This document shows, piece after piece, positions 1-54,600 of a stretch of DNA of 64,000 bases. The notes under the pieces are model-generated. The model was not told where the DNA came from. It made no database searches and saw only the letters and a program-made list of their open reading frames with translations. This DNA comes from Haliotis rubra (taxonomy: Eukaryota). The stretch is from positions 558,001 through 622,000 of the forward strand of contig NW_025766636.1 of assembly GCF_003918875.1 (NCBI RefSeq), given 5' to 3'. The translations under genes and the position numbers were made by a program. The stretch's first letter is position 1. Each line of letters begins with the position of its first letter.

Positions 1-471
1 CTCAGCAAAACTGAAATGAAATTGTCGTGAAACTCATCTATCATCAAGCTATAAAAATATCTAACAAAAGCAAGATCAACGTTACCTCCAAATCAGTTTT
101 GAAGGTAATAATTATTAAGAAATTAGTTATGAGTAGTACCACTTCCTTAATCCTCACAAAGATAGGATTACGCCATTTCTCCGATCTCACTTCTATAATT
201 AACGCAGTAATTCGTTGTACTGTGGCTAGGACAAAAATCAAAAGTGATGCAGCTCTTAAAACATTTATGACACTGAAGTAACTGTGCCAACATCCATCCA
301 TCCATCCATCTTTAGGACTGGCAACTATAAACAAAATAACATTAATTCAAACGCCTAAACAAAAGATTAACTACATGTTGACACTCAGGATTTGCACTTA
401 CACCTAACCCTATATCTTATAAACTTCAGAGTTAATGTTTCAAACATACAAATGCTCATTGTTCCACTCAC

Positions 472-3400
472 TTCATATTCTCAACTTTCCCATTCTCCTC
501 TTCGTCTGTCACCATGATGAATGTCTTCACTACCTCTTTCTTCTCGTAGAATGGCCACAAGCTAGCAGCAGGAGTTGTCCCCCCTCCTGCCTTGGTCGTC
601 ACCGCCAGCTCCAGCACTTCATCAATGGTCTTGGGCAAGTATGGCTTCCACGATTCTCAGTGTTGAAGAAGACAAGTCTGGCTGAGCAGATGGCGGTGAG
701 CAGACTGGCGATGATAGTGCTGGTTCGGATGGCGACCTGCATGGAGCCAGATGCATCGCCAATCACAACAATCGGGGACTCCAGAGGAAGTCTAAAGAAA
801 AGTACAGATAATGAATAAGTGATTCAATTATATTCTCGAAGCCTAAGGGTTCTGTTCTGTTCTCAACTAAATTGGACTCCCAGCTCTCTCCGGAGTTGAG
901 AGTTGGACTTATCTCAGGACTTGAGAGTTGGACTTTTATCAGTTGAACTCATCTCAGGAGTTGAGAGTTGGACTTATCTCAGGACTTGAGAGTTGGACTT
1001 TTATCAGGCGTTAAAAGTTGAACTCATCTCAGGAGTTGAGAGTTGGACTTATCTCAGGACTTGAGAGTTGGACTTTTATCAGGCGTTTAAAGTTGAACTC
1101 ATCTCAGGAGTTGACAGTTGGACTTATCTCAGGAGCTGTACATCAGTACTACATATATTACTTACTTGATTGATGTCAGTCTTGTTTCAGCCATGGGGAT
1201 CAGTTTGGGAAGAAAACAGACTTTAGTTGGGTTTGCCTCCCTTGCTGGGGCACTTGTGCTGTAATATGACTGAGTCTGGATGTTCTCACGGATTATCTTC
1301 AGGGTCAATAATCTTTCCAACAGTTTCCCATTGGCCAGGTTCACATTATCGCCTGCTTCAAGTCGTTCCGTTATGATCTTATCTACCTCCATGCACTGAA
1401 GATCCTCATACCACCTGTAGGAAGACAAACAGAGATATCAGTACAGTTTTCACATTGCATTGGTTGGACATTCAGTCAAAACTGAAAATAGACAGTAGAA
1501 TATTTCATTTGATTCCCAAGTATAGCAGATTTCATATATCATATAAATATACATCCGCTTAAAATCTGAAGGACTTTAAGTGTGTGGGTCAAATGGGGAA
1601 TGAATGTTGTTTTACGCTGCTGTAGTCTACACTATTCCATTGATATCAACTTGGTGCGTTAACTGACAGGACTAGACACATGAATGATTGACACCATGAA
1701 CATAGATGTATACAATGACAGATAATCTGTCAACATTTTAACCACCAGAGCCAACATAGAGTGACCCAGAATCCAGAGTGAGTGAGTCAGTTTACAGCAT
1801 GTCATGGAGAGAGATACTGTTTATTGCAGTCTCAACACTTTTATGGAATATTTAAATTATATAATTAAAATATTTAAATATATAAACACATCAAAGTGTC
1901 AGAAGATATATCCAGTTTCTAAAGAGAGATATATGTTCAAACAATATATTTTTCATGAAATTAGAATAAATAAGAAACTAAATGGTTGATATTAATTATT
2001 TCTTGGTTTGGGATAGTTTTAAAATCTTGGTGGATAGGTAGGCGGAAAGAATAAAATAAAAAAATCATGTTATTTTTTCTGAATATATCAATATATTTTC
2101 TGAATATGTTGTTTCCAGTTAAGTTAAACTTGTCTCATCACTTAACCTAATGTTTTGACTCTTTTGTGTGAGCACAAATGATTGCAACAATGCATATTTT
2201 ACCATAAGACTGTGTCCAGTTTTGACTCATATGCAGCTAATCTGGCTTTGGAGTTGTCCGTCAACTTGGCCTTGTGTTCCTTGACATGCGTGTATGGGAC
2301 ATCGTACTCTGTGATGAGGTCATTGACGTTGGCCTCGGTGACGTCCCGACACCTCTCCACCATTGATCCACTAGGGGGATTGTCCCCAAAACAGAACGGC
2401 AAGAACCATGGCAACACTTCAAAATCCTGCAACACAAAACATGCATATGAATTACACACAGATCAATAAGTGATATAAGTAAATGAATGCTGTACTCCAA
2501 CATACAACCAGACCTATCACTGCAGCCTGTCTGGGGATAGACAAACCTGGCAGTCAACTGCACGAATGACAACTCAACACTAGCAGATTTTTTTAAACGT
2601 AGGAAGCACTGTATGACATCATCAGCGCAGGATGGAGCACATTTGAAACTTATAAAAATGTGCAGTTAGAAAGTGACATGAAGAACACAGCAAACTAAGA
2701 TGATTTATGTTTGCTTATAGATAATTGTTTCCTACATGCATATAGGACTGAACACTGTGATTCATATGTAGCTGCAAGACTGAACAATGTGAAAGTGCGT
2801 CTAGCATAATACATGTAAACTCTTTTGTCATGTGTACATTAGATTAAAATGACATATTGTATTATGCCTCACTTCAGACCAGGTGACACCCACTGACAGT
2901 CAATCTTCATGGCCATGACTGACTGACTGAGTTTGGTTTTACGCCGCATTTAGCAATATTCCAGCAACATCACGGTCGGGGGACACCAGAAATGGGCTTC
3001 ACACATTGTACCCATGTGGGGATTCCAACCCGGTCTTCAGCGTGACGAGCCAACGCTTTAACCACTAGGCTACCCACCGCCCCTTCATGGCCATGTCGCT
3101 CTAAGTACAATATATGATCTACACGTGAAGATCCGGGTTAGAGTTGATCTTCAGTAACTCAGAGACGACTTACAGGATCGGGTGGTCAGACTCGCTGACT
3201 TGGTTGACTCATGTCATCGTCATCCCAATTGTGTAGATCGATGCTCATGATGTTGATCGCTGGATTGTCTGGTCCAGACTCGATTATTTACAGACTGCCA
3301 CCATATAGCTGGAATATTGCTGAGTGCAGCGTAAAACTAAACTCACAATATAATCAGCTGTCAGACTTACTGTTTGGGGGTTGAAGTGGCAGATGTCTGC

Positions 3401-5232
3401 CAGTTTCTTCCATGGATCTTTAGGGTAGTGGAGAGCGTAGAACTCGAGCTCCTCCTTGGTGAATGTCTTTACCCACGCCTGGACATGTTTGCACACCGCC
3501 CCACTTGCTGACCCTTGCTGCAAACAAAATCATCACAAGTATTAATACCATGGTATGGCTCAGTATATGCCAATAATGGTTGTCACACCAGAAGGGGTGA
3601 CAACCATTATTAATATATTAATCTGACCAGTTGTTTTAAATCATTTTGTACTACCTCACATCGGTTTCAATCTCACTAAGATCTGAAATTGCAGCTCCAG
3701 GGCGGGGGTAGCACATGTTCATGTTCACGAAGATTACACTGATTTCAAAGAGATTGCACTTGTTTCAAATTTTGAGTCTATTGTGATTTCGTTATCAGCA
3801 AATAATGTAATGGAATTCACTGCTCTTTCATGTTTGTAAGACAAACTGTTAGAATATTATTCTGATTTGCAAATACTTTTCCATCTTATGGAGAGAAGGG
3901 AAGCAACTCTAATTAGTTAATTAGGAAACAGCTATCAGTGCTGTTATTTCATTTGCCACACTGAATTAAGAAGAAAGTATATTTTTGATAATAAAATAGA
4001 ATATATCATGTACATGTTTAATGAAAATTAATATTTTCAATTAGGATCTTTTAATTAGGTCTACTAGCAGTTTAGTGTTGAGACTGTTGCTCGCATTTTC
4101 TATTATTGGTGCAACACATCAAGGGAGACAACCCCTGCATTACTTACTGGTGGTTTTATTGCATTGAGGTTGTCAATGTCTGACTTCAACTTTCCGAACT
4201 TCGTCTTGCTGATCTTTGACCCTGTGAGCTGCAACCTTTTGAGCTTCTTCTCCAGAACACGCACTCTCCTTCCCGAGTCAAGTAAAGTTAATGTCTTCAA
4301 GACCTCAACTAGTCCAAACTGCTCTCTGTTCTGGAGAAAGGCATCAGCAAGCTTGTAGTCATGCCGCGCCCATGCTGCAGTCAAAGCTCGTACACAGGCA
4401 TCTGCAATTTCACAATGAAAGTTTGCGTTATTAGTTTCATTTAGAATTTTTACAGAAATCTGTGCATATGTTTTCATTCAAAACTTCTAGAAAATCTATA
4501 TTCATTGAGACACCTTCATAATGCTTGATATTATATATCTGACTTGTCGAATGCCCTGTACAACTTCAGTATAAATATTTGAAGAAAGGACAAATCTCCT
4601 TACTCTTTCCCTAAAAATATCTCTGCCATTGATCATTTTTCTCATAACATTTCATCTATATATATCTGCAAGTAGCTTTTCTTTATTTACTGATCTTTTA
4701 AAGAGACAACTTGTCAATAAATCTACATTGATATCCTAACAAATTAAAACTTACTTCCGAAATATATATATATTCAATTTGTTACATTAACTTTAACAAA
4801 TTATATATTTAATGGAGAAATATACAGAATAGATCTTTGATGTAGTACATATTGAAAAAAACCATTCATTTTTAAAAACTATATGCACTCACAAAATTAT
4901 GCTGATGCATCAAAAATAAAACTTGACGTCAGCAATTTGTACTCACTTTGAGCCACTGCCACTCCATTCTTCCTGAGAACTGCCATTGTGGCAGCGTACC
5001 TGTCCAGGTTGTCTGTCTGTCCCTGGATGTGTTGGGCCACCGATGCGGTGCCTGTGAAGTAGTCATTAGGATTCGTCTCGATGTCGAACTGTTTTGGAGC
5101 ACTGCCTTGCTCATCTTTAACTTGATTCGAGGCGGACGCATATCTCCCTCGTCCTCCTCTACGACTACGACCACGCCCACCTCGAGCACCCCCACGTCCA
5201 CGTCCACGACCACGGCCTCGTCCTCTCGACAT
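472..5232 (-). CDS. RGG + TROVE-like + vWA domain protein, paralogue A (Ro60-like family); last exon apparently outside the window
   Basis: GT-AG exons 5232-4947, 4401-4148, 3517-3371, 2426-2203, 1414-1166 and 791-472 join in phase and align with paralogue B (lengths 254/147/249 identical). Motifs: MSRGRGRG..., WKKLADICHFNP, GDASGSM, FIMVTDEEE. One 1-nt frameshift near 645. Confidence 0.85.
885..1135. repeat. Intronic minisatellite (~25-bp units, ~76-bp higher-order period)
   Basis: Repeated ggagttgagagttggacttatctca variants. Confidence 0.9.
2918..3083 (-). mobile_element. tRNA-derived SINE, family A
   Basis: A-box TAGCCTAGTGG, B-box-like GGTTGGAATCC, tail GCTGGAATATTGCTAAATGCGGCGTAAAAC; target-site duplication cttcatggccatg at 2905 and 3083. 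Confidence 0.9.
3124..3346 (+). mobile_element. SINE-like repeat, family B
   Basis: Similar copies at 11930-12154 and 37577-37804; 3' tail shared with family A. Confidence 0.85.
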
Positions 5233-5349
5233 TATGAAATGTGACAACTGTAGAAAACTATACGAGGTGTCTTAATCGGTCATATATGTGGTGCCCGCGT
5301 TCTAAGTCTCTCTCGTCAGCGAACTATGGGCTACTACCGCATGCTCGTG

Positions 5350-5356
5350 TTTATAT
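5350..5356 (-). promoter_or_regulatory. Candidate TATA box of paralogue A
   Basis: ATATAAA on the minus strand about 120 nt upstream of the ATG at 5232. Confidence 0.4.
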
Positions 5357-6253
5357 CGCACCAAGTGCGCCTTGCACAACAACATGTCAACAGCTCGCGT
5401 ACCTAGCAACACTCGGAACTCCGCACATAAATATAGTTCGGTGAGATAGGTCTGCATTATTCACTCCAATATATATATTCAATAAATATACGTTTAAATG
5501 TGATTATATCATACAGAATATTAACACATTTAGAAGCTGTCATGTATTCTAATGCAGAGATTACGCTTCAACTGTACGCGTTTCGATGCGTAGGAATATA
5601 CATATGCGGGTTCATTCATGAAATTACGTTTAGCTTTCGTCAGTTCGAATTTTACCATGACGTGTTAAAAGAGTCGACAAGAACCTTCTCGAACATCATT
5701 ACAATGAGAGAAGAAATGTTTTAGATAATATTTGAATTCCCTATGTTACTCGAGTTGAAAAGCTGCAGATAAACATGCAACACTTCAACTATACAGATCG
5801 ATATATAACTGGTCCATCAAAAATCACACAAAACATTTGCGGCAGGTTAAAAACAAACACCGTTATTATTATGAATTGTTTTAAAAACATTGACCACCAT
5901 TTTGTAATGAACGAAGACTGCGATGTTTATTACAATGAAATATTATTTAGCAAGCTTGTCCTATCTAGGTCCTATCTAGGTTGTCCTATCCCCGGGCCCC
6001 TACTCTTTGTATATGATTGCATATGTAGTTGTAATCGCGGTTAACCGCGCTCAGTCTGCAAGCTATAACAGGTGGAACTCGGCCAAACCTATGGAAGAAA
6101 TAACATTGTTTATATCTATATCTTAATGGCATTTTAAAGATGTGATGGCATCAATGGAGAAAGAGGCTAATAATATCAGCTTCTTTTTCATTTTGTCAAT
6201 GCGATGTTTTTAGGTACATATGTCCTTAAATAATAATTTAAGCAAGTGTTGTA

Positions 6254-6341
6254 CCCAGATAGCATTGTGACGTTGGCCCAACGTTGGCAATGTTGGCAAA
6301 ACCATAGCTAACGTTGGGCCAACGTCTGAATGCTAGCTGGG
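6254..6341. mobile_element. Short hairpin MITE flanked by TA
   Basis: TA|CCCAGATAGCATT..GACGTTGGCCCAACGTT ... AACGTTGGGCCAACGTC..AATGCTAGCTGGG|TA inverted repeat. Confidence 0.75.
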
Positions 6342-7060
6342 TATTAGCTTTTCATATCAATACCCATGAAAAACTACAGTTCTTACCGAACATGATGTGT
6401 TTTACCTCTCTATTTGTTTGTTTGGGTTTTTTTTCGTTCGTTCGTTTTCTTTCATTCATTTTTTTAACAGACTACAACCAGACATAATTGTGTCGGTATA
6501 CACATCATAGGTTTTCACAATCTACCTACTTATACAGACAACAACGTGTCGGCGACATGATATTATTTGTATACATTTTCGTTTCTGCTATTTTGTTTCG
6601 TGTCACATTTGTGCACATGAAGTAGTTCAACTGTATCTTTTTTTCTTGTCTTTAATAAGAGAACCAAACCATTTACAATCATATGACATTAAACCTTAAA
6701 CCTCGATGAAAGGCCACAGGAAGTAGTGATGAAACGTCGCAATTACAAACATAGAAACGGTGTAGGATTTTAGTGTGGATGGTTGTTTTTTTTAATAAAT
6801 CTCAATAATTCTGTGGAATACCGCTTGTTTCGGAATATGGTGTAACATTCATGTAGGGTATACTTACTATTTTACTCATTTGTTTAAAATAGAATCACAC
6901 TCCCATACCTGATGAAACGTACGAGAAATATAACAGTGACTGGGATACCGTAAACGGATCTCAAATGTTAGCTGCTTCGACGAACGATGAACGGAAGGCA
7001 ACAAAGACGTAATTAGAACTACATCATATTTGACCCTAGGTCATAGAAGCTCGAGTACGC

Positions 7061-7151
7061 TGATTGGCTACAGGAAATCTGATCGCTGATTGTGCAAGAT
7101 ACAAATTCGTAGGTTCATATATAAATGTTCTGACGCGTTGAAACAGTCAGT
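7061..7151 (+). promoter_or_regulatory. Core promoter of paralogue B (inverted CCAAT, TATA, Inr)
   Basis: ATTGG near 7063, TATATAAA 7118-7125, TCAGT 7147-7151 about 30 nt downstream of the TATA. Confidence 0.55.
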
Positions 7152-7228
7152 ATACTGAAATATGGGAACATAGCTGAATCAACGATTTACCAGCGTGAAA
7201 GACACCTCGTGAATTACCGAACAATAAC

Positions 7229-10200
7229 ATGAGCGGACGTGGACGAGGCCGCGGAAGGGGTAGACGGGGCGGGGGACATAGAGGTAGGTCCCGAGGTGGG
7301 CGGGGCGCCATGCGGGGTGGCATGGGGAGACAGCACGTGGAGGAAGTGACAGATCAAAACAAGGTGGAGGAACATACGGATCTGGATATAGAGAAGGAAC
7401 CGAAAGACTATTTTGTGGGGACAGTGAGTATGGCAGATCACGTGAAAGGACAGGAGCAAAACAGAACACGTTATGCAGCTGCAATGGCGGTGTTGGCTAA
7501 CAGCGGAGTGGCGGTATCTCAGAGTGAGTCATCATCGGATTATATATTGTCTATATATAGCCAAATGAAAGCTATAACGCTTAGCTTTAACACTATATTA
7601 AATATCCGGGAAGTGTTAGAATGCATATCTAACTGTTTTCCCATTTTCTCCTAATACAAGGTTATGTGCATATGTTGGCTTTAATAGTGTACGTGTGTGT
7701 GAACCATAAAACCCAGCCTGTGTAATTTGTTTTTAAAACAATGCACAAAATTCCACATCAGTATACTATCAATATGAGTATAGTTCAAGATTATGGAAAA
7801 CATTACCAAGCACATGTGCATGAATGCATATAAAGTTGTAATCGCGGTTAACCTCGCACGGCTCATAAAACACACTTAACATCGCTTTTGAGAAATCGGC
7901 TTAACTTGAGGGAAAAATTCAGGGGAAAATATATGTGGAATACGATAATATATGTTATGGGTACGTATGCCATTATGGGTTGTACGAAACGAGTTTTGAA
8001 TACCTCGTGCAGGAGCGAAATATATAATGGAATCCTGATCAGACATAATCTTTTCTCTTCTAAAATGTCCAAGCAGAAAGAAATCTCGACTTTTATATAT
8101 GCCATATACATGTATCTCACTAGAAGGAGTGCTTGGGTTTTGGTCTAAGGCCTCCGTGACCAGTATTTCAATTTTGAAGGCTTAGGAGGAAAGTTCGAAG
8201 TGGACCAAGTCTAGACATTAATAATTAGAGCTGTGGTAACAACAGCCTTTATTTGTGTAGGTGCTGACAAAAATATGATAAGTGTGATCTTGGATTTAAA
8301 CCCGCGACAATGGGTCCCTCACAAATCGGAACATCGACTCTCCGCCTATTTCACTCAAGTGACAAAAAGGTGTGGTTACCTTGCTGTCCCGTCGACCTTA
8401 GTTCGATTCCCATAGGGAACAGCGAAACCCATGGTCCCCTGTCAATAATACTCAGTCATGTTTCACTTTGATTATTCCAGACGCGAGGGTGCGGGCGTTG
8501 GCTGCGGCGTGGGCAAGAAGCGACTACGACCTCTCAGACGGCTTTCTCCAGAACAGGGAACAGTTCGGTCTGGTGGAGGTACTAAAGGCCTTGACATTGC
8601 TGGACTCGGGGAGACAGATTCGCGTCCTTGAGAAAAGAATGACAAGGTTACTGCTGTCAGGGACAAAGGTCAGCAAAAAGAAGATGGGGAAGATTAAGGC
8701 TGACCTAGGAAACCTCAAGGCTATCAAACCCCCAGTAAGTGGAAACGTCGCCATCTTTAAATTGTTTGAAGCTTTCAGTAAACTTAATAACAAAATTGAG
8801 ATAATGTTAATTATGTTCGATGCAGTGGGTTAATGTACCAGTATTGGATGGGGAAAAACAAAAAGAACATATCCACCACTCGAATCGGGCCTTCTTTATT
8901 GTATTTACAGTAGTATATTTACAAACTTTCAAGATCACTTGGATGCGAGTGTTTCCAGACTGTACATAATGCTGACTGCAGCTTATAACAGCATCAACAC
9001 TTCCTGTATATTATGTACAAAAATACGAAAAGAATTCCGTAATAATCACAATTTGTTTGTTTAATCAAAGACAGGGGTGTATAAACGGATATAACATGTT
9101 TGATGACGTGTTGCCAGACAGGCTCCGCCAGTGGCGCCACCTGCAAGCACATCACGAGGTGGGTGAGGAACTTCACCACCCAGGAGCTGGAGTTCTACGC
9201 ACTGTACTTCCCCAAACAAGGCTGGAAGAAGCTTGCAGACATATGCCATTTTAATCCCAAAGAGGTAGATAAACGCAGCTATGTTCTATTACCAAATAAG
9301 TTGATATACACAGACATATTTTTAGAACAAAAGCCAAATATACAGAGATAATATTTAATCCCAAAGCGGTGGATATACGTGGCTTTAAGGTCACAACATA
9401 CGTAGCTATTTCAACACTACAAACTGTGTGAAGTTTAATTGTCGTATGTACAAACAGCTAACCTTTTAATATTCTGGAAAGGTTGCCCTTAACTTCCTTT
9501 CAAACTGGTATTATTTTTTCCCGAAAATGTGAGTTAAAGGTTATAAAGTAACGTATTATATTTTTAAATGGTATTTCGTTGACAATTTGCCTAAACGATA
9601 TAACGGTTTAATCAGAGAAGCTTGCACTAAAAGCTACTGATGCAATACACTATGAAACAAGACTCAGTGTCGTGCGACATTGACGGGTTTATAATCTTGT
9701 GCAGGATTTTCCCGCGTTGCCATGGTTTCTGCCTTTCTGCTATGGTGGGCCTGCTCCAGACAACACGATGGTGGAGAGGTGCCAGAACCTGACGCCAAGC
9801 AACGTCGACGACCTTGTGAAGGAGTACGACATCCCGTACAGTGTGATGAAAGCGCACGTCGAAAGCCTTACGCCTGACTCTATGACGAGAGTGGCGGCAT
9901 ACGAGAAGCTGGACACCATTCTCTGGTAGGTGCCATATATAAGCTTCTGGTAAGTGCCATATATAAGCTGTTGGAAATTGGTGTGTGTGTGTGGGTTGGG
10001 GGGGTGTGTTGTTGTTGATATAAACGTTAATATAGGTCATAGGTATGAAATACACAATGCCATATTTAGAAAGTGGTCAAATGTAACATATGTTATATTT
10101 GGGATTACACCCTATGTTACATAGGTCGTAGGTGCCTGGAGAGCGCAGAATCTCGGGACCTCTCGCAGGCAGACCGTATGCTATACGTGATCATAACCAA

Positions 10201-12950
10201 ACACCATTTTCTTGTATATCTTATGCAATATCTTACCTGGGTATATATAGGGAGAATCTGGACATCATTTCACGTGTTCAGGTATCTTACGTTTTACTGG
10301 ACGCTAGGTGTTTGAGCTCAGCGACATCATCCTCTTGTAAGCCTGCAAAACCATCTCCAGTTAATATGTCTGTATGACCTGACCAGGGCGATATCACTAT
10401 CATAACTCTTGTCGATGGTTGTCTTCCAGGTACTACGAGGACCTGCAATGCCTGGAAGTGGACGCCGTGGTGAAGAAGAGGCTTGAGGAGGGCCATAAGG
10501 TGTCGCTGCCCAATGGAAAGCTTCTGGAAAGACTACTGACTCTGAAGATGATCAGAGAGAACATACCCTTTGACCCCAGCTACAGCGGGTGGGACGTGCC
10601 TCGCATTGAAAACCCCACTAAAGCCTGCTTCCACCCGGCGCTGGTGGCCCTGGCAGAGGACAGGCTTAACAGCATCAAGTAAGCATAGTCCAAGAAACTC
10701 ATTACATACTATAGGTACCTTTGCCTCTTCGGTCGGGGACGTATCCAGCCTAGGTCTGGATGTAATTAGTGAGTGAGGTGGACACGGTGGAAGGGTATTT
10801 AGGGTATTTTTTTTTAGCATTATTTTTTATTTATTTATTATTTATTTTTATAATTATTTTTTATTTTTTTATTTTATTTTGTGTGTGTGTGTGTTTGTTG
10901 TTCGGGTTGGGTTAGTGATTTAATATGTGTTTTGGCTGCTGATATCCAAGCGCCCTTACTGCACATTGTAACCCCATGTGGTGAGTCGAGCTCATTTTAT
11001 CCATGAGACTGCCCTGTAATTAATGTCCAGTGAGACATCGTAACAACTAATCAGCACATTTCCGTATATACGTCTCATGGGTCGTAGGTATCATGTCACT
11101 TTAGTATGTATACACATGTTTCCGTATTGACGGAGGATACTTTCCCGGAGTTCCGGTAAAACGGGATTATAATATAACATATATTTCTGTCAACAGATTG
11201 AATCTGGAGTCCCCAGTAGTTGTGATGGGGGACGCCTCGGGCTCCATGGACGTCGCAGTGCGGACCAGCACCATCATCGCCAGTCTCCTCACCGCGGCGA
11301 CGTCTGCCAAGCTCGTCTTCTTCAACGAATGGACCAGGGATGCTCCCTACCTGCCAAAGACCGTAGAGCAGGTGGGTTATACATATTTGTTGTGTTGGTG
11401 ATAAATGCAGGGAAAAATACCCGGAATGGAGCCATACTTTTGACTGACGTTTGTGAATGACAGGATTTGTTTTGTTGATTTTGCATAAGAAGTTCGTAAG
11501 GCTAGGAACGTTTCGAGAATAGCTAGCCAGGAGTATAGTTCCGAAAACTTGAACCTGCAACTGCGAGTGAACGTTCCGCTAACTTTGATTACGGTAGGAT
11601 AATAATATATGGATGAACAACTTCCATACTGACAAAGATATTTTATGGATTTAAGCTTCTTTATTCTTTCTGACACTACGTTTCGGGATCATTACAGGTC
11701 CCTTCATCAGGTGAAGTGACAGTTGACACTATACTACTGTAATAAAGATCGTTCATCCATATATTATCGTTCCTTAGTTCCCAATTCTAAATGCCACTCA
11801 AAGAAGTTAGTTTTGGGTTGATGTTGACGAGGTCACATCTAGCATGGTCAGAGAGCGTACCTTGCAGATATACCTCGTTAGTGCTGTATCTGTTGAACAG
11901 ATACCCGTCGTATCGACTGTTGGTATGGTTGGTTGTTTATTCTATTTAACCCCGCACTCAGCAATATTCGAGCTATATGGCGGCGGTCTGTAAATAATTG
12001 AGTCTGGACCAGATAATCCAGTGATTAGCATGAGCATCGATCTACGCATTTGGGATACGATGACATGTGTCAACCAACCATCCGATCTCGTTAGTAGCCT
12101 CTTACGACAAGCATGGGTTGCTGAAGATCAATTATAACCCGGATCTTCACGGGTGACTGTTGTATGAAGAACACACCTGTTGTATGGTTGTTGTATGGTA
12201 TTCGTCTGTAGTATAGGATCCCTGCTCACGCTTTCGCTCTCAGGAAGTCATCACTTGTTGGACCGGGTTGTAACTGTGTTGTTGTCATGTTGCAGTGCCT
12301 GGAGTTGGCGGTGACCATACGAGCGGAGGGGGGCACGGCGCCTGCTGCCAGTCTCTACCCGTACTATAAGGAGAAGGAGGTGGTGAAGACGTTCATCGTC
12401 GTCACTGATGAGGAAGAGATGGACGAGTACGAGGGATACAGGTACGTCTTGGGCCTCAACCTCAGAGGGAACTGTCTCAAAAGAATCTGTAAATTATTTT
12501 TTTACGTCTACAATGCATATATCTGTAATTGAAAACTGGAAAGGAGGATGCAGTATGAGGGCCCTTTCTGGACAATTTGAAATGATAAAGTTAGGGAATC
12601 TTTGAAATACTGATGTGACTCTTTATAGCTGGGTGGATTCCTGTTGCAGGTTCTGTCCGCTGTTCAAGAAGTACCACACCGAGGTGTACCCGGCCAAGTT
12701 GGTGTTCGTGTCCTTCCTCCAGGGGCAGCACAGAGAAGGACGCATGGTGAAGGAACTGAAGGAAGAAGGCTTCAAGCCACTTCAGTACCGCCTGGAGACC
12801 AACAGGCCTGACCTCACCAAGCTGGACAATCTGTTCGGGATGCTTGCATCCAACTCGACTGAGTTCTTCGAGGATGAGATTAAGGAGATGGAATTTCGTA
12901 TTCAGAAAGACGGACTGAAGTCTGTGTTTAAATCCACTACAGCTGTTTGA
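7229..12950 (+). CDS. RGG + TROVE-like + vWA domain protein, paralogue B (~595 aa, complete)
   Basis: Exons 7229-7523, 8481-8734, 9118-9264, 9705-9925, 10430-10678, 11197-11371, 12296-12441, 12650-12950 total 1788 nt, all GT-AG and in phase; MIDAS-like DASGS...T...VTDEE. Confidence 0.9.
11598..11768 (-). mobile_element. Penelope-like terminal-repeat fragment with a degenerate hammerhead-ribozyme core
   Basis: Minus strand CTGATGA-AGGGA..TCCC-GAAAC..GTC followed by AATAAA; flanked by inverted atatatggatgaac / gttcatccatatat. Confidence 0.55.
11930..12154 (-). mobile_element. SINE-like repeat, family B
   Basis: Reverse-complement match to 3124-3346. Confidence 0.85.
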
Positions 12951-15394
12951 GTGTCAGAGCAATCTTTTCTGAAAGGTCAAAAAGTGGTTTACAGATAGCC
13001 ATTGAGGCTCATTCGATCTAAAATGAGGCTTTGTTTTTTGCTATGGTATCAGCATGGGGTTTCTGCCAGTGAGTTTTTGTTTTGAGACTACGTTAAATGC
13101 CAAAATGGGAATTCCATTGTGACGCATGTACCTCACATGTTACGTAAGGGCTTCCAGCTTTTGGATATGACTCCATGTTTCGCTCTGATCCCACTGATTT
13201 GAGAACAAATGTGTCAGTGTGCCGGTCATCTGATTTTGCAGAAGTGGTACCTCACCATCGTTATACTTTAGCTATGACTGCAAAGCTTTATATTGTGCAG
13301 TGACTGACACTGAACAGTTTGTGAAAAGACACGTGGACTGTAGACCTCAGACAATAGACGTGTGGTTTATGAGGAAGGTTTGGGTCTGGTGTCCACCGTC
13401 CGGTAGTGGTACACGTATCATGTACAGGACTGGACGCGTAGCTGACCGATCAAACGTTGCTACCGTACTGGAGAAGATCCATCGTTCTTTGAGGGAGGGG
13501 TTCACACATTATCATTTTAATTGTTGGTGAGTGTGCGTCTGTGTGCGTCTGTGTGGTGTGCGTTTGATCCGTGGGAGAAATATGTGTTACATGTGTGCGA
13601 GTGTGTGGGCGAGAGAAACGTTTCGTACGTGTATACACGTGTACATGGGTTCATGTTTTCTGGTGCTCGACAGACAGGTCGGAAGGGCCAGTGTTTGGGG
13701 GCAGATCGTGTAGTAACACACGTTTACAGTTAACATCACATAACACTGTTTCAGTTACATGTTTATAAGTTTCAGTTTATAGAATTAACGACGACAACCA
13801 TGTCATCAGTGTTTCCTAGTTAGACAAGTCGGCACCCTGTTTACAGCACAGCAGATTCATGTATGGTCAAGCAGAGTTTGGGTAAATGATACACGTCAAA
13901 AGTGCACTGCAAGCCACACCACTTGATTTTCTTCATGAAGGAACATGGTGTAACCACAGAAATCGGCTTAAACAAAAATAAGTTTACATCATTGCCCTTA
14001 TCCATGAAATAGAAAATGGCTGGCCAATGAGCCACCTGAAACATAAGCTGAGTAGAACCAATCCCTTGTCGACTATCAGTAGGATATGTGGGGCTGATGG
14101 ACCTGATACTGCTCGCCAGGAACAAGTTGGACTTCAATATATATTAGAATCAGATAAATAAGAAACGACTGTATATATTTGACCAGTGCAACCTCTCATC
14201 AAAGCACAACCTGTGATCTGTACATATAAGCTGTCTTCCAGTCCGGCTACAGTGTACTCCAGTTCGACATGTAGGCATGGAGCTGTAGTTTATGTGCTGG
14301 CATGTATCTCCAAGGCTAGGGTTTTACCCCGCTGTCTGCAATATTCCTGCAATGTTAGGGTTGTCATGGTTCCCACATGTAACACCCCCAACACACACAC
14401 ACCACCCCCACCCCACCCCCATACTGGGGAACATAGTATCATTCGACTTTAAAATAGACAACAGAAGAACTTGTTCACTGGACGTACTTTGGTCCAGCGT
14501 ATTTGGTGTCATCTTCCAGTGAAAACACTTGAATGTCTTGAAGTGCTGACTCAAAACCTATTCAGTTTCATTCCCCAAAATCCCAATATGCCCCCTGAAA
14601 AACCTACATTATTAATTTGGGGACATAGCTGTATTAGTGGGTGGTCAATAACAGAGTTATGTCCCTTGATCATTTCAGGAACAGATGATTATGGCTGTAG
14701 CGTAACAAAACGTCTGTGCAATCTCACTACTCTAAACAATCATCATTCCACGCTTGTTCACCTTCATCTAGAAATGTGCAATGCTCCTATGTATGCATTT
14801 ACACACTGCTGTTCTTTGTAAACAATTTTGATACTTTTACATTCTCTGCTTTGTACAGTGCCTGTTGTTGAAAACAAATGCAAGTATTAACAATTGTTGT
14901 ACAATGTTTATATTGTAATAAAGATGAAACAAAGTGTTATTTTTGACTCCTCCATTCCTGCTTGGCAATTATATGTGTAGCTTAACAGTCTTGAAAGTGC
15001 AGTCTCAAAAATACATACACGTATTTCCATTTTAAAACAAACTGTTTCCTTTCTAATGTAATCTCTTGCCTTTCTAATGTAAGACCAACATTGGTTACAT
15101 TCAACTAATGACAAGAGTAGTTCATATAACATGTATTAACTACTACAGTATATGTTCTGAGAAGCAGTTAATTAAATAGACTTACTTCATTTGCTTCAAC
15201 ATAATACCCAATACAATATTTGGTTCACCTTAAATACTTAACTGAACTGATGTACAGAATATAGGGACTTAAATGAATTTCCAGCCAATGGGCACTTGGG
15301 TGAAGAGTCAACAAATCGTGCTAAAAGCCACATAGCGGTATCTACAGTGTAGCCCTGGATCCTTTGCCAACCTAAAATGGAAATATCAGGTTTC

Positions 15395-29888: not shown

Positions 29889-32800
29889 ATGACCTCAGCG
29901 GGTCACGGAGCTGTGTTCGTGTTAACTGTTCTGATTCAGTCCGCCGTATATATTCATACATCTGACGTCACTCCATCTTGTAATTACACCCTCACGACCA
30001 CCCGGGGGGTGATCCGCTCCCCAAACTACCCCCACCCCTACCCTGGCGGGGTAACATGCCAGTGGCACATTACTGTAGGTAATTATGTAAACGTCAGCGG
30101 CCTAACGATAGCCATTAAACACTACTCCACGCAAGAAACGAACTCAGGAAGGCTGTTTGAGGAGGAACTTCTAATATATGAAGAAAACCCTTCTTTCCCT
30201 AACGCGACTCCTGTTGTTTACACGGAGACCGATGATGTTTACCAGTCACAACAACACGAACTCTGGCTGAGGTTTTCATCTGCTCCAAACATCGGCACAA
30301 AAAGACAAGGGCCGAACGTCCTCGGCTTTGACATACTGTACAGCGCTGTTATCCCCGGAGACAGCTGCCCATCTCGCGACATCCCCGACACTCCCTTAAA
30401 TGCATCCGTTGTTGGCAATAGTACAGTGGGGTCGTTCATCTCCTACAGCTGCAGCCCTGGTTTTAGACTTGACGGGGCTCGTGTGACTGTATGTGTGTTG
30501 GGCGAGTCGGGCCAACCAACGTGGTCCGACCCCGCCCCTTTGTGTTTGGACACGTGTAAACTGCCAACTATACCAAACGGGAACACGCAGTATTTAGATT
30601 TAAAAGTAAATTCAACTTTAACATTTTTCTGTGATTCTCCATACGTCGTTAAAGGAGGAGATACGATCAAATGCATTCTTGATAACAGAGAAGTGCCAGC
30701 CTGGAACAGATCTTCTATACAATGTGTAATTCCTGATTGTTCTAAGCGGATGGTTCTAACACAATTGAGTGGCGCTGTAGTGAACCCGGGTTACGCCACA
30801 AGTGTTATCAACGCCGCCGTGAGCTGCAGTTGGCAGGTCGTTGTTGAGGTCGGTCGGATCATTCACCTTTCATTTCTATACTTCGACCTGCCCGCCGGTA
30901 GCACGCTAGAAGTGACAGACACAGGGCGCGAGAGGAGACTGATTGTACGGTTAGTTGGTGGAGAGGCACCTCGAAATGTCACCAGTCAAACAAATGTAGT
31001 GGAGATAGAGTACCATGGTCCAGCGAGGAACTCCACCGCTCATCAAGGCTTCTACATACAGTATCAGATGGGCTCTCTCCCGATCCTCTTAGATGACGAG
31101 CACAGGCGCTCCAGAACCCCCAATCTACCTCCGGTAAGTAAAACAATAAAACTATACATTAGTTGTAGTGCTTTCAGTTCACGTCATTATACAATATCAC
31201 AGACACGCACGCTCGCACACAGCCACAGAAACACAGACGCACGTGTGTATGTGCGAGTGCGTGCGTGGAGGGGTGGGCGGAAACTGTCTGAATATCAACC
31301 TCTGTTGTCTTGTAAATCCCACTGTGAACACTATGATTACAATGCCTTCTTTTCTATACTTGTATACACGAGGTATTTTGGTATGTTTAGACATGACAGA
31401 TATGTGATGATAGATGATGGAAGTTGGCCATCGATTATAAGTGAAACTATAGGGAGATGTATTTCATTCCTGACATCATTTGCCCCCAAGGTGAATATAC
31501 ACCAATTTCAACTTGGTATTTTCTTGATAGGTAGTCTTACCACAAGGATTGAAATGAAAACCTGATTATATCACGAATAGTCTGAAAAACAGTTATATTG
31601 ACGTACGTTTTAATTATTTCTGTTAGACGGGATTATTTTATTGCATGTTATCGATGTTAACTTTCTGGAGCAATACAGTATTTCACCAGTAACCATATAT
31701 GTTTATACACATGTATATGCATGACAAGATACATTGACCTGAGCATTGTTTAAAGGCGCACATTACTGTGACACATAAATATGGAACCCTCCTCCAGACA
31801 AACATTTTGTCACTTGGATATGCGATCAGCATGATATACGACGTTTGTATCCCCCAGGGTATAATGGTTTATACATCCCCTCTCTTGTAAATACGTTCAG
31901 GCGCTGACAGCTGATGCCTATCAATAAATCACTGAAGCTGTCATGTATTTTAATAGCATTTACACTCACTGATATTAGTGATAACTACATACTACAGGCA
32001 GTGTAGGGTCGTCCTGGATCGTTATATTAATGCAATAGTAGACAGTATTACATATGCTGGCATGTTTAATATTATCCCTGAATTTCTTTACAAAAGTATT
32101 GAAGAACTGGATATAGAGCAGTATAAATCTCCGCCCCATATAATCGTNNNNNNNNNNNNNNNNNNNNNNNNNNNNNNNNNNNNNNNNNNNNNNNNNNNNN
32201 NNNNNNNNNNNNNNNNNNNNNNNNNNNNNNNNNNNNNNNNNNNNNNNNNNNNNNNNNNNNNNNNNNNNNNNNNNNNNNNNNNNNNNNNNNNNNNNNNNNN
32301 GCACATCGTACGTAAACCTAGTACACATATTTCTAAGAGATTATATCAATGTAGAGGCATTTTGGTGTTGGTATTGCACAACGACCTCTGTTTAGATAAC
32401 ATCATGTAATAGTATACCTTGTTTTCTGTTGATTTTCCTTGTAATATTATCCATGGGGATAAATTATTTTAATTTAAAGGGGTGATGGGGGAAGGGTGGG
32501 GAGTGAATGATGGAGTTTTATGTACATATAATCAATCATTTTTAAAACCTTTAGCGTGATATCGACGTAATATTTCAGTATAGACATGTCATTGTTCTCA
32601 AGGACTGCAAGTACGAAGCCATGTATTATGTCTTTACGTTGAGCATCTGAAGCTTTCATTGTTCGTGACCCTATTATCGGAGTTTTTGTGTCTTTTGGGG
32701 GTTTGACGCGGCGCCAGCAGGTAGAGGGTTGTATTTGACCAAGTGGAAACCGGGGGATGTTAATTCTTATAGACAACACCTGTACACTCACACGGAACAA

Positions 32801-51633: not shown

Positions 51634-54600
51634 ATGCAGTCAGGTAATGGCCACACCCGCAGATCAGATGGAAGGCAGATTGTAGTTGATTAGGATTCTG
51701 CTAAAGATTTGTTACCATGGTTACTGGAATCATATATCTGTGACCATTTTGCAGTGTGTAACCATGGTAACTCATGCCAGGTCAGAATGAACTGAGTTAC
51801 TATTTTCTGTTGACATTGTACATAAATGTTTTAGCACTCTACATACTGTCATTGTGCTTGTACCAGAAACACTGTGATAGACATGGAGTGGTTATCATCA
51901 AGTGTGTGACATGCATGTTCATTGTGCTTGTACCAGAAACACTGTGATAGACATGGAGTGGTTATCATCAAGTGTGTGACATGCATGTTCATTATGCTTG
52001 TACCAGAAACACTGTGATAGACATGGAGTGGTTATCATCAAGTGTGTGACATGCATGTTCATTGTGCTTGTACCAGAAACACTGTGATAGACATGGAGTG
52101 GTTATTATCAAGTGTGACATGCATGTTCATTGTGCTTGTACCAGAAACACTGTGATAGACATGGAGTGGTTATCATCAAGTGTGACATGCATGTTCATTG
52201 TGCTTGTACCAGAAACACTGTGATAGACATGGAGTGGTTATCATCAAGTGTGTGACATGCATGTTCATTGTGCTTGTACCAGAAACACTGTGATAGACAT
52301 GGAGTGGTTATCATCAAGTGTGTGACATGCATGTTCATTGTGCTTGTACCAGAAACACTGTGATAGACATGGAGTGGTTATCATCAAGTGTGTGACATGC
52401 ATGTTCATTGTGCTTGTGCCAGAAACACTGGAAGTTCTTTTTTTATAAATATGGATGAAATACTACCAAACATGACATTTATGTCTGGACACAAACATCA
52501 GGCTAACACGCATGAGGCACAAGATTATTTTGTGTTTTTTCTGTGATCCACGTGTTTTGGGCATGATAATATATGAATGTTTTTCATTAAATATCTGTTC
52601 CATTTTCAATCATTGTTGTATTACCATGATTACTGTATTTCATCTTAGACCTGGAACTCACAGTGCAGTAAGTTTACAAACTCACAGAAAAATCTGTTTA
52701 TTTATTGGACTGAGTGACAAGAATTGTGAAGTTGACATGTCAACATGTCAAAAGGACATAAACACAGCAATAATAATAATAATAATAATAATGTCACTTA
52801 TAAAGCGCAAATGTCCACAAACTTATGAATTCTCAATGCGCTGAAAAGAATGGAGTAAAAAAACACAGCAATAATAATAATAATAATAATGTCACTTATA
52901 AAGCTTAGGTGGGTGTCCACACACTTATGAATTCTCAATGTGCTGAAAAGAATGGAGTCAAAGGAGTCAGTTATAAAGTTATGGTCACTGTGAAACAGGT
53001 GGGTTTTATCTTTTGACTTGAAGGTTGAGAGAGATTCACAGAGTTTGATTTCTAGAGGTACAGAGTTCCAGAGAGTTGGTGCAACATAGGAGAAAAACCT
53101 TTTCCCATATGAAACTAGGTGGAATTTGGGAACTTGTAGTAGGGACCGGAGTGATCTTGGTGGGATGTATTCTGTGATGCAGAGAAGTTTGAAGTTGATT
53201 CTCTGTTGAATAGGTAGCAAATGCAAGGATTTGAGAACAGGAGAGATGTGATCAGATTTAGTCTTCAGAGAAATAATTCTTGCAGCTGTATTCTGTACTT
53301 TTTGTAATCTGGAGATATTGTGTTTGCTGAGGCCGATCAACAGTCCATTGCTGTAGTCTTGTCTAGATAACACTTGAGAATCCACTCTGAAGAACAGGGG
53401 GCCATGGGGTAGCCTAGTGGTTAAAGCGTTCGCTTGTCACGCCAAAGGCCCGGGTTTGATTCCTCACATGGGTACAATGTGTGAAGCCCATTTCTGGTGT
53501 CCACTGCTGTGATATTGCTGAAATATTGCTAAAAGCAGCGTAAAACCCAACTCACTCACTGAAGAACAGTGGTAAATTTGAGCCCATGAATTGAGATATG
53601 GTTTCATTGCTGCTTTTATTGCCACTGTGCATGCAATTCACCAACTCTAAACAGGACATTTTCCTATGCAACCATTTTTTTGTGAGAATTAAATATGTGA
53701 GTTGTAGGTGACTAACATTCATTGTTAATTATAGGAGGACATTGGAAATGATTGTAAACCTACCTGTTGTCAGACAGTAACTTGTTTGTGACCTTACCAA
53801 TCACAGGTGTGATCATCTATGTGGAATCTCATTTGGGTTTTCCAGTTTTAAACTTGTCCTCTCTGCAGTCTGAGTATTTGTGTTTAGGTGTACCAAAGGT
53901 GACCTTTATTTTAACAAGAAATTGGTTGTGAATATTTAATACCATGTAGATAGAATGTCTTTAATCCAGTTCCTCGTGGCATATTTATCTGCCTGTCATA
54001 TGAGCTTGTAGCAAATGAAAATATCGATCAAGGCTGACATTTTCCCCTCCCATGAACACTTGTTATATATGTTAGATTTTGCAGGACACCGTTTTTTTCA
54101 ACCAGCCATATTGATAATGATTTGCATATGTCTGACATTAGGTTCATGTGGAATACTGTCGGAACAGTCTGTGGTATTATACCGGTATGTAACGGTATTT
54201 CAATGGTAATTTCTGCCAGACATTATGATTATCAACACTCAAAATCTACAGGTCCCAGTAACATCTTGCCGATCAATATCCGGTGTGTATTAGGCATCCG
54301 TCACACTGTAATCCTTCCTCTAACTGTAAGTAGTCCTTTCACGTATGACATTAAGTCACTAATTATTGTAAGACAGTATAGGTAATGGAACCGAAAATAT
54401 TATCTATGAGACATCTTTTGTGTATTGGATCGTAGCTGTTCTATTCTACTCCTTGATGATCAAATCTACATTTATAACCCAATCATTGAGTAAATATTTA
54501 CCCCCGAGTGGAGAAAACGCCAACTGAGAACCACTGATTGCTATATCCTGTGTATCCTCTTTTTGAAGGAACAGAACAGAACAAGCTGGATTTTATTATC

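What the first reader, a model, noticed from the sequence alone, without database searches (positions are those of the whole stretch)
472..12950. Head-to-head pair of Ro60/TROVE-like vWA genes
Seen: two divergently transcribed paralogues 2 kb apart with matching exon sizes; introns show no obvious similarity, so the duplication is old and coding sequence has been conserved. Knowledge: Ro60/TROVE proteins have a helical ring with a G..R.....W......L....KY....W...D...L.H.KP segment followed by a vWA domain with DxSxS...T...TD. Here GSASGAVCKHVQAWVKTFTKEELEFYALHYPKDPWKKLADICHFNP, GDASGSM, GGT and IVVTDEE occur in that order in a protein of similar size. Inference: a divergent, probably uncharacterised TROVE-vWA family distinct from Ro60 and TEP1, perhaps a ring-shaped RNA-binding or RNA quality-control/defence module of two co-regulated proteins.
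Basis: partly seen in the sequence, partly recalled or inferred. Interest (0 to 1): 0.78.

Follow-up and report, generated by a model that had tools for sequence, protein, structure and literature searches.

The report
Abalone pair of Ro60-like genes
Two back-to-back abalone genes encode proteins whose predicted shape matches the RNA-binding autoantigen Ro60, but they belong to a separate, unnamed and unstudied family found in many invertebrates, protists and giant viruses.

Summary
The window is blacklip abalone (Haliotis rubra). It carries two divergently transcribed paralogues about 2 kb apart, with matching exon sizes and phases and about 63% protein identity.

Gene B (7229-12950, + strand, 8 GT-AG exons) encodes 595 aa, identical to the RefSeq "uncharacterized" protein P0188. 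Gene A (5310-472, - strand) loses its last exon at the window edge and lacks intron 6. As assembled it has a 1-nt frameshift. Contigs from four other runs carry one more base there, two of them spliced RNA contigs, and dN/dS is 0.11. I therefore read gene A as a live gene.

No Pfam family reaches threshold. An AlphaFold model (pLDDT 91) matches Ro60/Rsr first. For the whole protein Z is 15-16.7. For the helical domain alone, the only three chains of 48,161 with Z>=8 are Ro60-type. The vWA domain keeps a full MIDAS site, and the N-terminus is RG-rich.

The family follows the species tree across spiralians and non-vertebrate deuterostomes. It also occurs in protists, where amoebozoan members carry a C-terminal RING or U-box, and in giant viruses.

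RNA binding and co-regulation remain inferences.

The parts
4947..5310 (-). Gene A exon 1 (5'UTR plus CDS from ATG at 5247; RG-rich N-terminus)
   Evidence: Spliced RNA contigs X7/X8 lie on 4947-5310; ORF and RGRGRG run; GT donor
4148..4401 (-). Gene A exon 2 (254 nt; basic helical hairpin region)
   Evidence: RNA contig block; AG/GT; 73% aa identity to B exon 2
3371..3517 (-).
2203..2426 (-). Gene A exon 4 (224 nt)
1166..1414 (-). Gene A exon 5 (249 nt)
472..791 (-). Gene A fused exon 6/7 (MIDAS DxSxS at 740-760, GGT, IMVTDEE). There is no intron here. The last coding exon lies outside the window.
   Evidence: One contiguous block in RNA contigs X7/X8; sequence; donor GTGAGT after 472
641..647 (-). 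1-nt deletion in the assembly that shifts gene A's frame and gives a premature stop at 601-599
   Evidence: Reading. DNA contig X1 has one base inserted after 646, which restores ...REAPYLPKT.... Contigs X3, X7 and X8 also hold one more letter than the window across this exon. Position of the stop.
5311..7228 (.). Intergenic spacer between the two 5' ends. 5248-5935 and 6826-7228 are conserved with H. rufescens; the middle is not.
   Evidence: blastn of the window against L002
7229..7523 (+). Gene B exon 1 (ATG at 7229; RG-rich N-terminus)
8481..8734 (+). Gene B exon 2 (254 nt)
9118..9264 (+). Gene B exon 3 (147 nt)
9705..9925 (+). Gene B exon 4 (221 nt)
10430..10678 (+). Gene B exon 5 (249 nt)
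11197..11371 (+). Gene B exon 6 (175 nt; MIDAS GDASGSM at 11228-11248)
12296..12441 (+). Gene B exon 7 (146 nt; GGT threonine, IVVTDEE at 12395-12415)
12650..12950 (+). Gene B exon 8 (end of the vWA domain, C-terminal helices, stop at 12948-12950)
   Evidence: The spliced product is 595/595 identical to P0188.

Best explanation
SHOWN:
- The locus holds two old, selectively maintained paralogues of an unnamed eukaryotic protein family.
- The members have three parts: a disordered RG-rich N-terminus, a roughly 345-residue alpha-solenoid with the TROVE fold of Ro60/Rsr, and a vWA domain with a complete MIDAS metal site (D-x-S-x-S, T, D).
- The family is not Ro60, TEP1 or DUF2828 by any sequence test.
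- It is inherited vertically in spiralians and non-vertebrate deuterostomes.
- It also occurs in Amoebozoa, Discoba, Ancoracysta, giant viruses and at least one megaphage.

INFERRED:
- Like Ro60, the protein probably binds RNA. Candidate binding surfaces are the solenoid/vWA ring, the RG-rich tail (net +10) and a strongly basic helical hairpin at residues 138-185 (net +10).
- The MIDAS face probably recruits a protein partner.
- In Amoebozoa the same core carries a C-terminal RING or U-box, often with an N-terminal UBA-like motif. The pathway output is therefore probably ubiquitination of a bound partner or RNP, that is, an RNA or RNP surveillance role.
- The two abalone copies would act as diverged isoforms. 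Whether they pair or are co-regulated is unknown.
For: Gene structure, expression and selection:
- Gene models and paralogy.
- The gene B product is 595/595 identical to H. rubra P0188.
- Gene A is transcribed and spliced, shown by RNA contigs X7/X8.
- dN/dS between H. rubra and H. rufescens is 0.105 for B and 0.114 for A, with dS about 0.50.
- The same head-to-head pair is present in H. rufescens.

Fold:
- AF2 model of the whole protein: pLDDT 91.4, pTM 0.87. Helical domain alone: pLDDT 95.6.
- Ro60-type structures top every structural search.
- In the viral structure library, after one true family member (Indivirus, E 1e-31, TM 0.72), the next hits are phage 'TROVE domain-containing' and 'Ro-like RNA binding' proteins at E 1e-8 to 1e-7. 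DUF2828/DUF7788 proteins follow at 1e-4 to 1e-3.

Conserved features:
- MIDAS residues G400, D401, S403, S405, T461 and D485 are at least 90% conserved in 78 representatives.
- 37 of 78 representatives have RG-rich N-termini, and both basic segments carry net +10.

Fusions and distribution:
- RING or U-box fusions in Thecamoeba, Stereomyxa, Balamuthia and others.
- Distribution and naming.
- The family tree follows the species tree.
Against: - No sequence-level link to Ro60/TROVE was obtained. Pfam gives nothing above threshold, and family profiles do not hit Ro60 chains in the PDB.
- The global superposition on Ro60 is loose. TM is 0.31-0.41 and rmsd 5-8 A, so ring closure and cavity geometry are not established. 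I could not inspect coordinates.
- In the whole-protein VIA search the vWA domain alone already gives Z about 13.
- No RNA partner is known, and no Rfam ncRNA lies in the window.
- RG-rich tails and basic hairpins are not specific to RNA binding.
- The E3 link comes from distant protist relatives, not from the abalone proteins, which have no RING.
Confidence: 0.6

Rival explanations
1. Protein-only adaptor. The solenoid and MIDAS-vWA act as a protein-protein scaffold or substrate receptor for ubiquitin ligases, without any RNA ligand. The Ro60 resemblance then reflects shared ancestry of fold only.
For: vWA/MIDAS domains are classic protein-binding modules. vWA-only hits reach Z 13. RING/U-box and UBA-like fusions occur in protists. 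There is no detectable sequence conservation with Ro60's RNA-binding motifs.
Against: The TROVE fold is so far known only from RNP proteins (established knowledge: Ro60, Rsr, TEP1, telomerase p80). An RG-rich N-terminus is found in about half of the representatives, alongside a net +10 basic hairpin. The nearest structural neighbours are all RNA-binding Ro proteins.
Confidence: 0.28
2. These are simply the abalone Ro60 (TROVE2) orthologues, duplicated.
For: Same domain order and similar length. Ro60 structures are the best structural matches.
Against: Identity in the structural alignments is 10-15%. No Pfam TROVE hit appears even at E<=10 on the isolated domain. vWA_Ro60 is only sub-threshold, in 13 of 78 members. 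No PDB Ro60 chain is hit by the family profile. The family has its own conserved signature and its own giant-virus and protist members.
Confidence: 0.02
3. Gene A is a decaying pseudogene (frameshift, truncated), so the locus is one live gene plus a relic.
For: The window sequence as assembled has a 1-nt deletion and a premature stop at 601-599. No H. rubra protein for copy A appeared among the listed homologues.
Against: DNA contig X1 has the missing base, and the frame is then open. X3, X7 and X8 each hold one more letter across the exon. X7/X8 are correctly spliced transcripts. dN/dS is 0.114 against H. rufescens, the same as for copy B. Intact orthologues exist in H. asinina, H. cracherodii and H. 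rufescens.
Confidence: 0.08
4. The proteins belong to the DUF2828/DUF7788 (UCP015417 vWA) family known from plants, protists and giant viruses.
For: DUF2828/DUF7788 viral proteins appear among the Foldseek hits in BFVD (E 1.9e-4 to 6e-3). They share the helical-plus-vWA layout and a giant-virus distribution.
Against: No Pfam DUF2828 or DUF7788 hit was seen in any of the scans. The structural matches are weaker than those to Ro/TROVE proteins.
Confidence: 0.04

Closest known systems
Ro60 / TROVE2 (eukaryotic Ro 60-kDa autoantigen; PDB 1YVP, 1YVR, 2I91, 9NEN, 9NFA)
   Same: Same domain order and size: a TROVE alpha-solenoid followed by a vWA domain with a MIDAS site. Best structural match for the whole protein (Z 15-16.7 over 411-431 residues) and for the helical domain alone (Z 9.3).
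   Different: 10-15% identity in the structural alignments. No Pfam TROVE hit. Loose global superposition (TM 0.31-0.41). An extra RG-rich N-terminal tail and a basic helical hairpin. Different phyletic pattern: no vertebrate, arthropod or nematode member among the listed hits. No known RNA partner.
Bacterial Rsr (Deinococcus, PDB 2NVO) and phage Ro-like proteins (Thermus phage phiLo 9L5Y/9KOP; Gordonia phage 'Ro-like RNA binding protein')
   Same: Closest fits for the helical domain: Z 11.2 with rmsd 4.4 over 277 residues, and Z 10.2 with rmsd 3.6 over 252 residues. Both groups occur in viruses.
   Different: No sequence-level similarity. The abalone family's own viral members sit in giant viruses and one megaphage and share its specific motifs.
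TEP1 (TROVE1) / Tetrahymena telomerase p80
   Same: TROVE module followed by a vWA-like region (established knowledge, Bateman & Kickhoefer 2003, cited in PMC3069013).
   Different: TEP1 is far longer, with NACHT and WD40 parts. None is present in these 590-aa proteins.
DUF2828/DUF7788 proteins (plants, protists, giant viruses)
   Same: Helical N-terminal domain plus vWA, with a distribution in giant viruses. Weak Foldseek matches.
   Different: No Pfam match, and weaker structural similarity than to Ro/TROVE.
RGLG-type vWA-RING E3 ligases
   Same: In Amoebozoa the family ends in a C3HC4_3 RING or a U-box placed after a MIDAS vWA domain, as in RGLG1/2. The RGLG vWA appears among the weak hits.
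   Different: RGLG has a copine-type vWA and no TROVE solenoid. The abalone proteins have no RING.

Membership tests
Ro60/TROVE2 family | Significant match to the Pfam TROVE domain model (PF05731) | tested here: not met
   No TROVE hit for exon pieces, full-length relatives, 78 representatives or the isolated helical domain, even at E<=10.
Ro60/TROVE2 family | HEAT-like alpha-solenoid (TROVE fold) followed by a vWA domain in one chain | tested here: met
   AF2 model pLDDT 91.4. Ro60/Rsr rank first by Foldseek and VIA. For the helical domain alone the only Z>=8 hits are the three Ro-type representatives.
Ro60/TROVE2 family | Closed ring with a central cavity that admits single-stranded RNA ends | not testable with these tools
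   Model coordinates cannot be inspected. The global TM of only 0.31-0.41 leaves ring geometry open.
Ro60/TROVE2 family | Binding of Y RNAs or misfolded non-coding RNAs | not testable with these tools
   This needs CLIP/RIP or in-vitro binding. No Rfam ncRNA lies in the window.
Ro60/TROVE2 family | Orthology-level sequence similarity to Ro60 | tested here: not met
   10-15% identity in structural alignments. Family HMMs do not hit Ro60 chains in the PDB at E<=10.
vWA (von Willebrand A) domain superfamily | Rossmann-like vWA fold with MIDAS motif DxSxS...T...D | tested here: met
   Residues 388-566 align to many vWA structures at Z 13-13.7 and rmsd 3-4 A. D401, S403, S405, T461 and D485 are at least 90% conserved. 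Pfam VWA_CoxE and vWA_Ro60 matches are sub-threshold only.
TEP1 / telomerase p80 (TROVE1) | TROVE module combined with NACHT NTPase and WD40 repeats | tested here: not met
   595-aa protein. No NACHT or WD40 hit in any Pfam scan.
DUF2828/DUF7788 | Match to Pfam DUF2828 (PF11443) or DUF7788 | tested here: not met
   Absent from all Pfam scans. Only weak structural matches in BFVD.
Bidirectional-promoter gene pair | Divergent transcription start sites less than about 1 kb apart and co-expression | tested here: inconclusive
   The known end of the A transcript is at 5310-5369 and the B ATG is at 7229. The B 5'UTR is unknown. Two separately conserved flanks are separated by an unconserved 0.9 kb. 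No expression comparison was possible.

The most novel reading that the evidence does not exclude
This is a third ancient eukaryotic Ro-like RNP family, overlooked because vertebrates and the standard invertebrate models lack it. It couples recognition of aberrant or foreign RNA by a TROVE-vWA ring to ubiquitination. The E3 domain is fused in cis in Amoebozoa and recruited in trans through the MIDAS site in animals. Giant viruses and megaphages have captured the module, possibly as a counter-measure. In abalone the two diverged paralogues may work as a pair.
Probability: 0.2. Interest if true: 0.8.

Novelty: new variant of a known kind. Interest (0 to 1): 0.6.

Why it matters
Ro60 is a much-studied autoantigen and RNA quality-control factor. 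Only two TROVE proteins, Ro60 and TEP1, are recognised in animals.

This family is a distinct, strongly conserved Ro-shaped protein. Members share at least 31% identity from protists to amphioxus, and dN/dS is about 0.1. It has no Pfam model and, in the library searched, no literature. Its absence from vertebrates, insects and nematodes among the listed hits would explain why it has been missed.

Three features give concrete, testable handles on what TROVE-vWA rings do beyond Y-RNA binding:
- the RG-rich tail;
- the recurrent RING or U-box fusions in Amoebozoa;
- the copies in giant viruses and a megaphage.

The abalone head-to-head pair itself is an ordinary old duplication.

Tried and rejected
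- Exon-by-exon Pfam scans of both genes gave nothing but a weak VWA_CoxE hit on the MIDAS exon.
- The word search with exon 2 returned only unnamed exon-sized fragments. I therefore used the single large HMM search, with an exon-2 profile, to reach full-length relatives.
- The family profile (A3) against PDB sequences hit only RING domains, which come from the fused protist members, and no Ro60.
- A profile of the motif-rich region (P0188 183-345, A5) also gave no Ro60 hit.
- I could not run a profile-profile comparison with a Ro60/TROVE alignment, because no tool returned a Ro60 sequence.
- Foldseek on the helical domain alone gave no E<=0.001 hit. Ro60 chains appeared only at E 0.13-0.23, although with probability 0.75-0.99. 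The VIA wide search gave the clear result.
- The scan of bacterial and archaeal genomes with A3 failed for lack of a conserved-enough pattern, so nothing can be said about prokaryotes.
- tblastn of P0188 against phage records found nothing.
- Divergent viral relatives (L009, L010) do not bridge to Ro60 by sequence.
- AU tests could not resolve whether the duplication predates the Haliotis/Gigantopelta split.
- Literature searches found no paper on this family.
- The Rfam scan found no Y RNA or other ncRNA near the genes.
- The scan's earlier notes hold nothing on Ro60/TROVE in this genome.


Full report
WHAT IS THERE

The first 13 kb of the window hold two paralogous, divergently oriented, multi-exon genes. 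tblastx of the reverse complement of 1-6200 against 6201-14000 gives seven collinear coding blocks at 54-73% amino-acid identity. The only similarity in introns is a shared interspersed repeat.

Gene B (+ strand) has eight exons, all with GT-AG introns: 7229-7523, 8481-8734, 9118-9264, 9705-9925, 10430-10678, 11197-11371, 12296-12441 and 12650-12950. They sum to 1788 nt, giving 595 codons and no internal stop. In a local script the translation is 595/595 identical to P0188, the RefSeq protein 'uncharacterized protein LOC124279819 [Haliotis rubra]'. The window is therefore blacklip abalone.

I only counted its length, stops and identity locally. All later searches and folds used the database protein P0188 or exon references.

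Gene A (- strand) is defined by spliced contigs from two runs that look like RNA. They lie on 5310-4947, 4401-4148, 3517-3370, 2425-2201, 1412-1166 and 791-472, with the introns removed. I shifted some boundaries by one or two bases to the GT-AG sites.

Exon sizes A/B are 301/295, 254/254, 147/147, 224/221, 249/249 and 321/175+146, with identical phases.

First, gene A's last coding exon lies beyond the start of the window. The RNA contig continues for 2176 nt that do not lie on 1-471.

Second, gene A has no intron between exons 6 and 7. That intron is present in Haliotis B, Lottia, the scallop Ylistrum and amphioxus, and absent in Haliotis A and Gigantopelta. It was therefore lost in A, not gained in B.

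Third, the assembly has a 1-nt deletion near 641-647 ('cc' where B has 'ccc'). It shifts gene A's frame and would stop translation at 601-599.
- A DNA contig from run X1 has one base inserted after 646, which restores ...REAPYLPKT....
- The contigs of X3, X7 and X8 each hold one more letter than the window across this exon.
- Gene A evolves under the same purifying selection as gene B. dN/dS against H. rufescens is 0.114 for A and 0.105 for B, with dS about 0.50 for both.

I read the frameshift as an assembly error or a rare allele, not as a dead gene.

AGE AND SYNTENY

H. rufescens has the same head-to-head pair with a 2-kb spacer, and the whole region is collinear with the window. About 690 bp upstream of A (5248-5935) and 400 bp upstream of B (6826-7228) are conserved, while the middle 0.9 kb is not. 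This looks like two promoters rather than one shared core.

In a tree of 50 family members, copy A (H. asinina, H. cracherodii, H. rufescens) and copy B (H. rubra, H. rufescens) form two fully supported clades. They sit in a trichotomy with the single Gigantopelta gene. AU tests cannot resolve that trichotomy. The intron loss shared by A and Gigantopelta hints that the duplication predates their split.

The duplication is therefore at least as old as the abalone genus. The rest of the tree follows the species tree: deuterostomes, rotifers, annelid/nemertean, bivalves and gastropods. This indicates vertical inheritance.

WHAT FAMILY IS IT

Sequence tools give almost nothing.
- Exon pieces, full-length relatives and 78 representatives have no Pfam family above threshold.
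- The only recurrent weak hits are VWA_CoxE (25/78) and vWA_Ro60 (13/78, best E 5.8e-4).
- The isolated helical domain has no hit at all, even at E<=10.
- Family profiles do not hit any Ro60 chain in the PDB.
- All named members are 'uncharacterized', 'hypothetical' or 'unnamed'. UniRef auto-names three of them 'TROVE domain-containing protein' and one 'VWFA domain-containing protein'.

Structure is decisive. With a 78-sequence alignment, AlphaFold2 models gene B's protein at mean pLDDT 91.4 and pTM 0.87. Only residues 1-42 are disordered.
- The 13 best Foldseek matches in the PDB are all Ro60, Rsr, phage Ro60 or 'Trove domain' entries, aligned over the whole length (E 6e-10 to 4.5e-6). Ordinary vWA domains follow at E about 1e-3.
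- VIA-align gives Z 14.6-16.7 over 411-431 residues for the Ro proteins, against Z about 13 over about 170 residues for vWA-only hits.
- Because the vWA domain alone carries much of that score, I folded the helical part alone (residues 45-392, pLDDT 95.6) and compared it with 48,161 representative chains without a Foldseek pre-filter.
- Only three chains reach Z>=8, and they are the three Ro-type representatives: Deinococcus Rsr (Z 11.2, rmsd 4.4 A, 277 residues), Thermus phage Ro60 (10.2, 3.6 A, 252 residues) and Xenopus Ro60 (9.3, 5.7 A, 285 residues). The next hit is Z 6.9 over a 47-residue hairpin.

The helical domain therefore has the TROVE fold, and the protein has the Ro60 architecture. 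Global TM-scores are low (0.31-0.41). I could not inspect coordinates, so closure of the ring is not shown.

FAMILY FEATURES

The MIDAS residues G400, D401, S403, S405, T461 and D485 are at least 90% conserved. Six residues of the solenoid are invariant: D140, R143, W219, H227, F240 and W306.

The N-terminal 45 residues carry nine RG dipeptides and a net charge of +10. A helical hairpin at 138-185 also has net +10. The vWA domain is acidic. 37 of 78 representatives have RG-rich N-termini.

DISTRIBUTION

Listed members come from molluscs, annelids, a nemertean, bdelloid rotifers, echinoderms, hemichordates and amphioxus. Protist members come from Thecamoeba, Stereomyxa, Balamuthia, Percolomonas and Ancoracysta. 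No vertebrate, arthropod or nematode appears among the rows shown. The lists are truncated, so this is not proof of absence.

In Amoebozoa and related environmental sequences the same core ends in a C3HC4_3 RING or a U-box. It often starts with a UBA-like DMA/CUE motif.

IMG/VR holds five full-length relatives (31-32% identity) on four contigs of 190-505 kb, one of 25 kb and a giant-virus MAG. The neighbours on one of them are viral-type: a YqaJ recombinase and a Ulp1 protease. In BFVD the best match is an uncharacterised Indivirus protein (E 1e-31, TM 0.72). After it come phage 'TROVE domain-containing' and 'Ro-like RNA binding' proteins (E 1e-8 to 1e-7), then DUF2828/DUF7788 proteins (1e-4 to 1e-3). 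A more divergent branch sits in a 595-kb megaphage.

HOW IT LIKELY WORKS

Shown: an old, constrained, transcribed pair encoding Ro60-shaped proteins with an intact metal site.

Inferred: by analogy with Ro60/Rsr, and given the RG-rich tail and the basic hairpin, the protein binds RNA. The MIDAS face docks a protein partner. The recurrent fusion to two different E2-recruiting domains at the same position in Amoebozoa points to ubiquitination as the downstream step. I give the combined reading about 0.6. Within it, the fold and family assignment stands at about 0.9 and RNA binding at about 0.5.

The main rival is a purely protein-binding scaffold (about 0.28). The plain Ro60 orthologue, DUF2828 membership and 'gene A is a pseudogene' are each contradicted by tests made here.

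NOVELTY

The fold is known. The family is not described in Pfam or in the papers I could search. It counts as a new variant of a known kind.

The abalone pair as such is an ordinary old duplication. Co-regulation of the two genes, and any 'defence' role, are untested.

Noticed in passing
window 641-647 (- strand, gene A exon 6/7): The assembly has a 1-nt deletion that breaks gene A's frame. Contigs from four other public runs carry one more base across this exon, located after 646 in X1. It is probably a homopolymer assembly error or a rare allele.
   Followed up: yes
window 2916-3349 (gene A intron 3) and 11915-12165 (gene B intron 6): An interspersed repeat of very high copy number, with summed contig depth in the tens of millions in DNA runs. 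Loose ends contain a tRNA-like 'GGGGAATCGAACCCG' motif, so it is probably a tRNA-derived SINE. Many copies also occur in the H. rufescens locus L002.
   Followed up: partly
window 472-791 versus 11197-12441; L016, L017, L018, L019: The intron between the MIDAS exon and the TDE exon is ancestral (Lottia, scallop, amphioxus, Haliotis B) and is missing from both Haliotis A and the single Gigantopelta gene. This rare shared change hints that the duplication predates the split of those lineages. Sequence trees cannot resolve the question.
   Followed up: partly
window 1-434: This stretch has no similarity to the collinear H. rufescens region, where gene A's last exon lies about 300 bp after exon 6/7. 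In H. rubra the last exon lies off the window, so the last intron has probably been enlarged by an insertion.
   Followed up: no
L004-L008 (IMG/VR), L009-L015, LR756511.1 285735-287246: Full-length relatives of the family (31-32% identity) occur on giant-virus-like contigs. A more divergent branch (23-27% to P0188; 42% between L010 and the megaphage) occurs on 340-595 kb phage-like contigs. None has a Pfam domain above threshold.
   Followed up: partly
P0110, P0112, P0122, P0124, P0148, P0158, P0285, P0286 (protist relatives): The TROVE-vWA core is fused to a C-terminal RING (C3HC4_3) or U-box, and often to an N-terminal UBA-like DMA/CUE motif, in Amoebozoa (Thecamoeba, Stereomyxa, Balamuthia) and in environmental sequences.
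   Followed up: partly
window 53403-53471 (+): A borderline tRNA match in Rfam (29.8 bits against a gathering score of 29). It is the only Rfam hit in the 64-kb window.
   Followed up: no
window 32148-32300: A run of 153 N (assembly gap or masked stretch).
   Followed up: no
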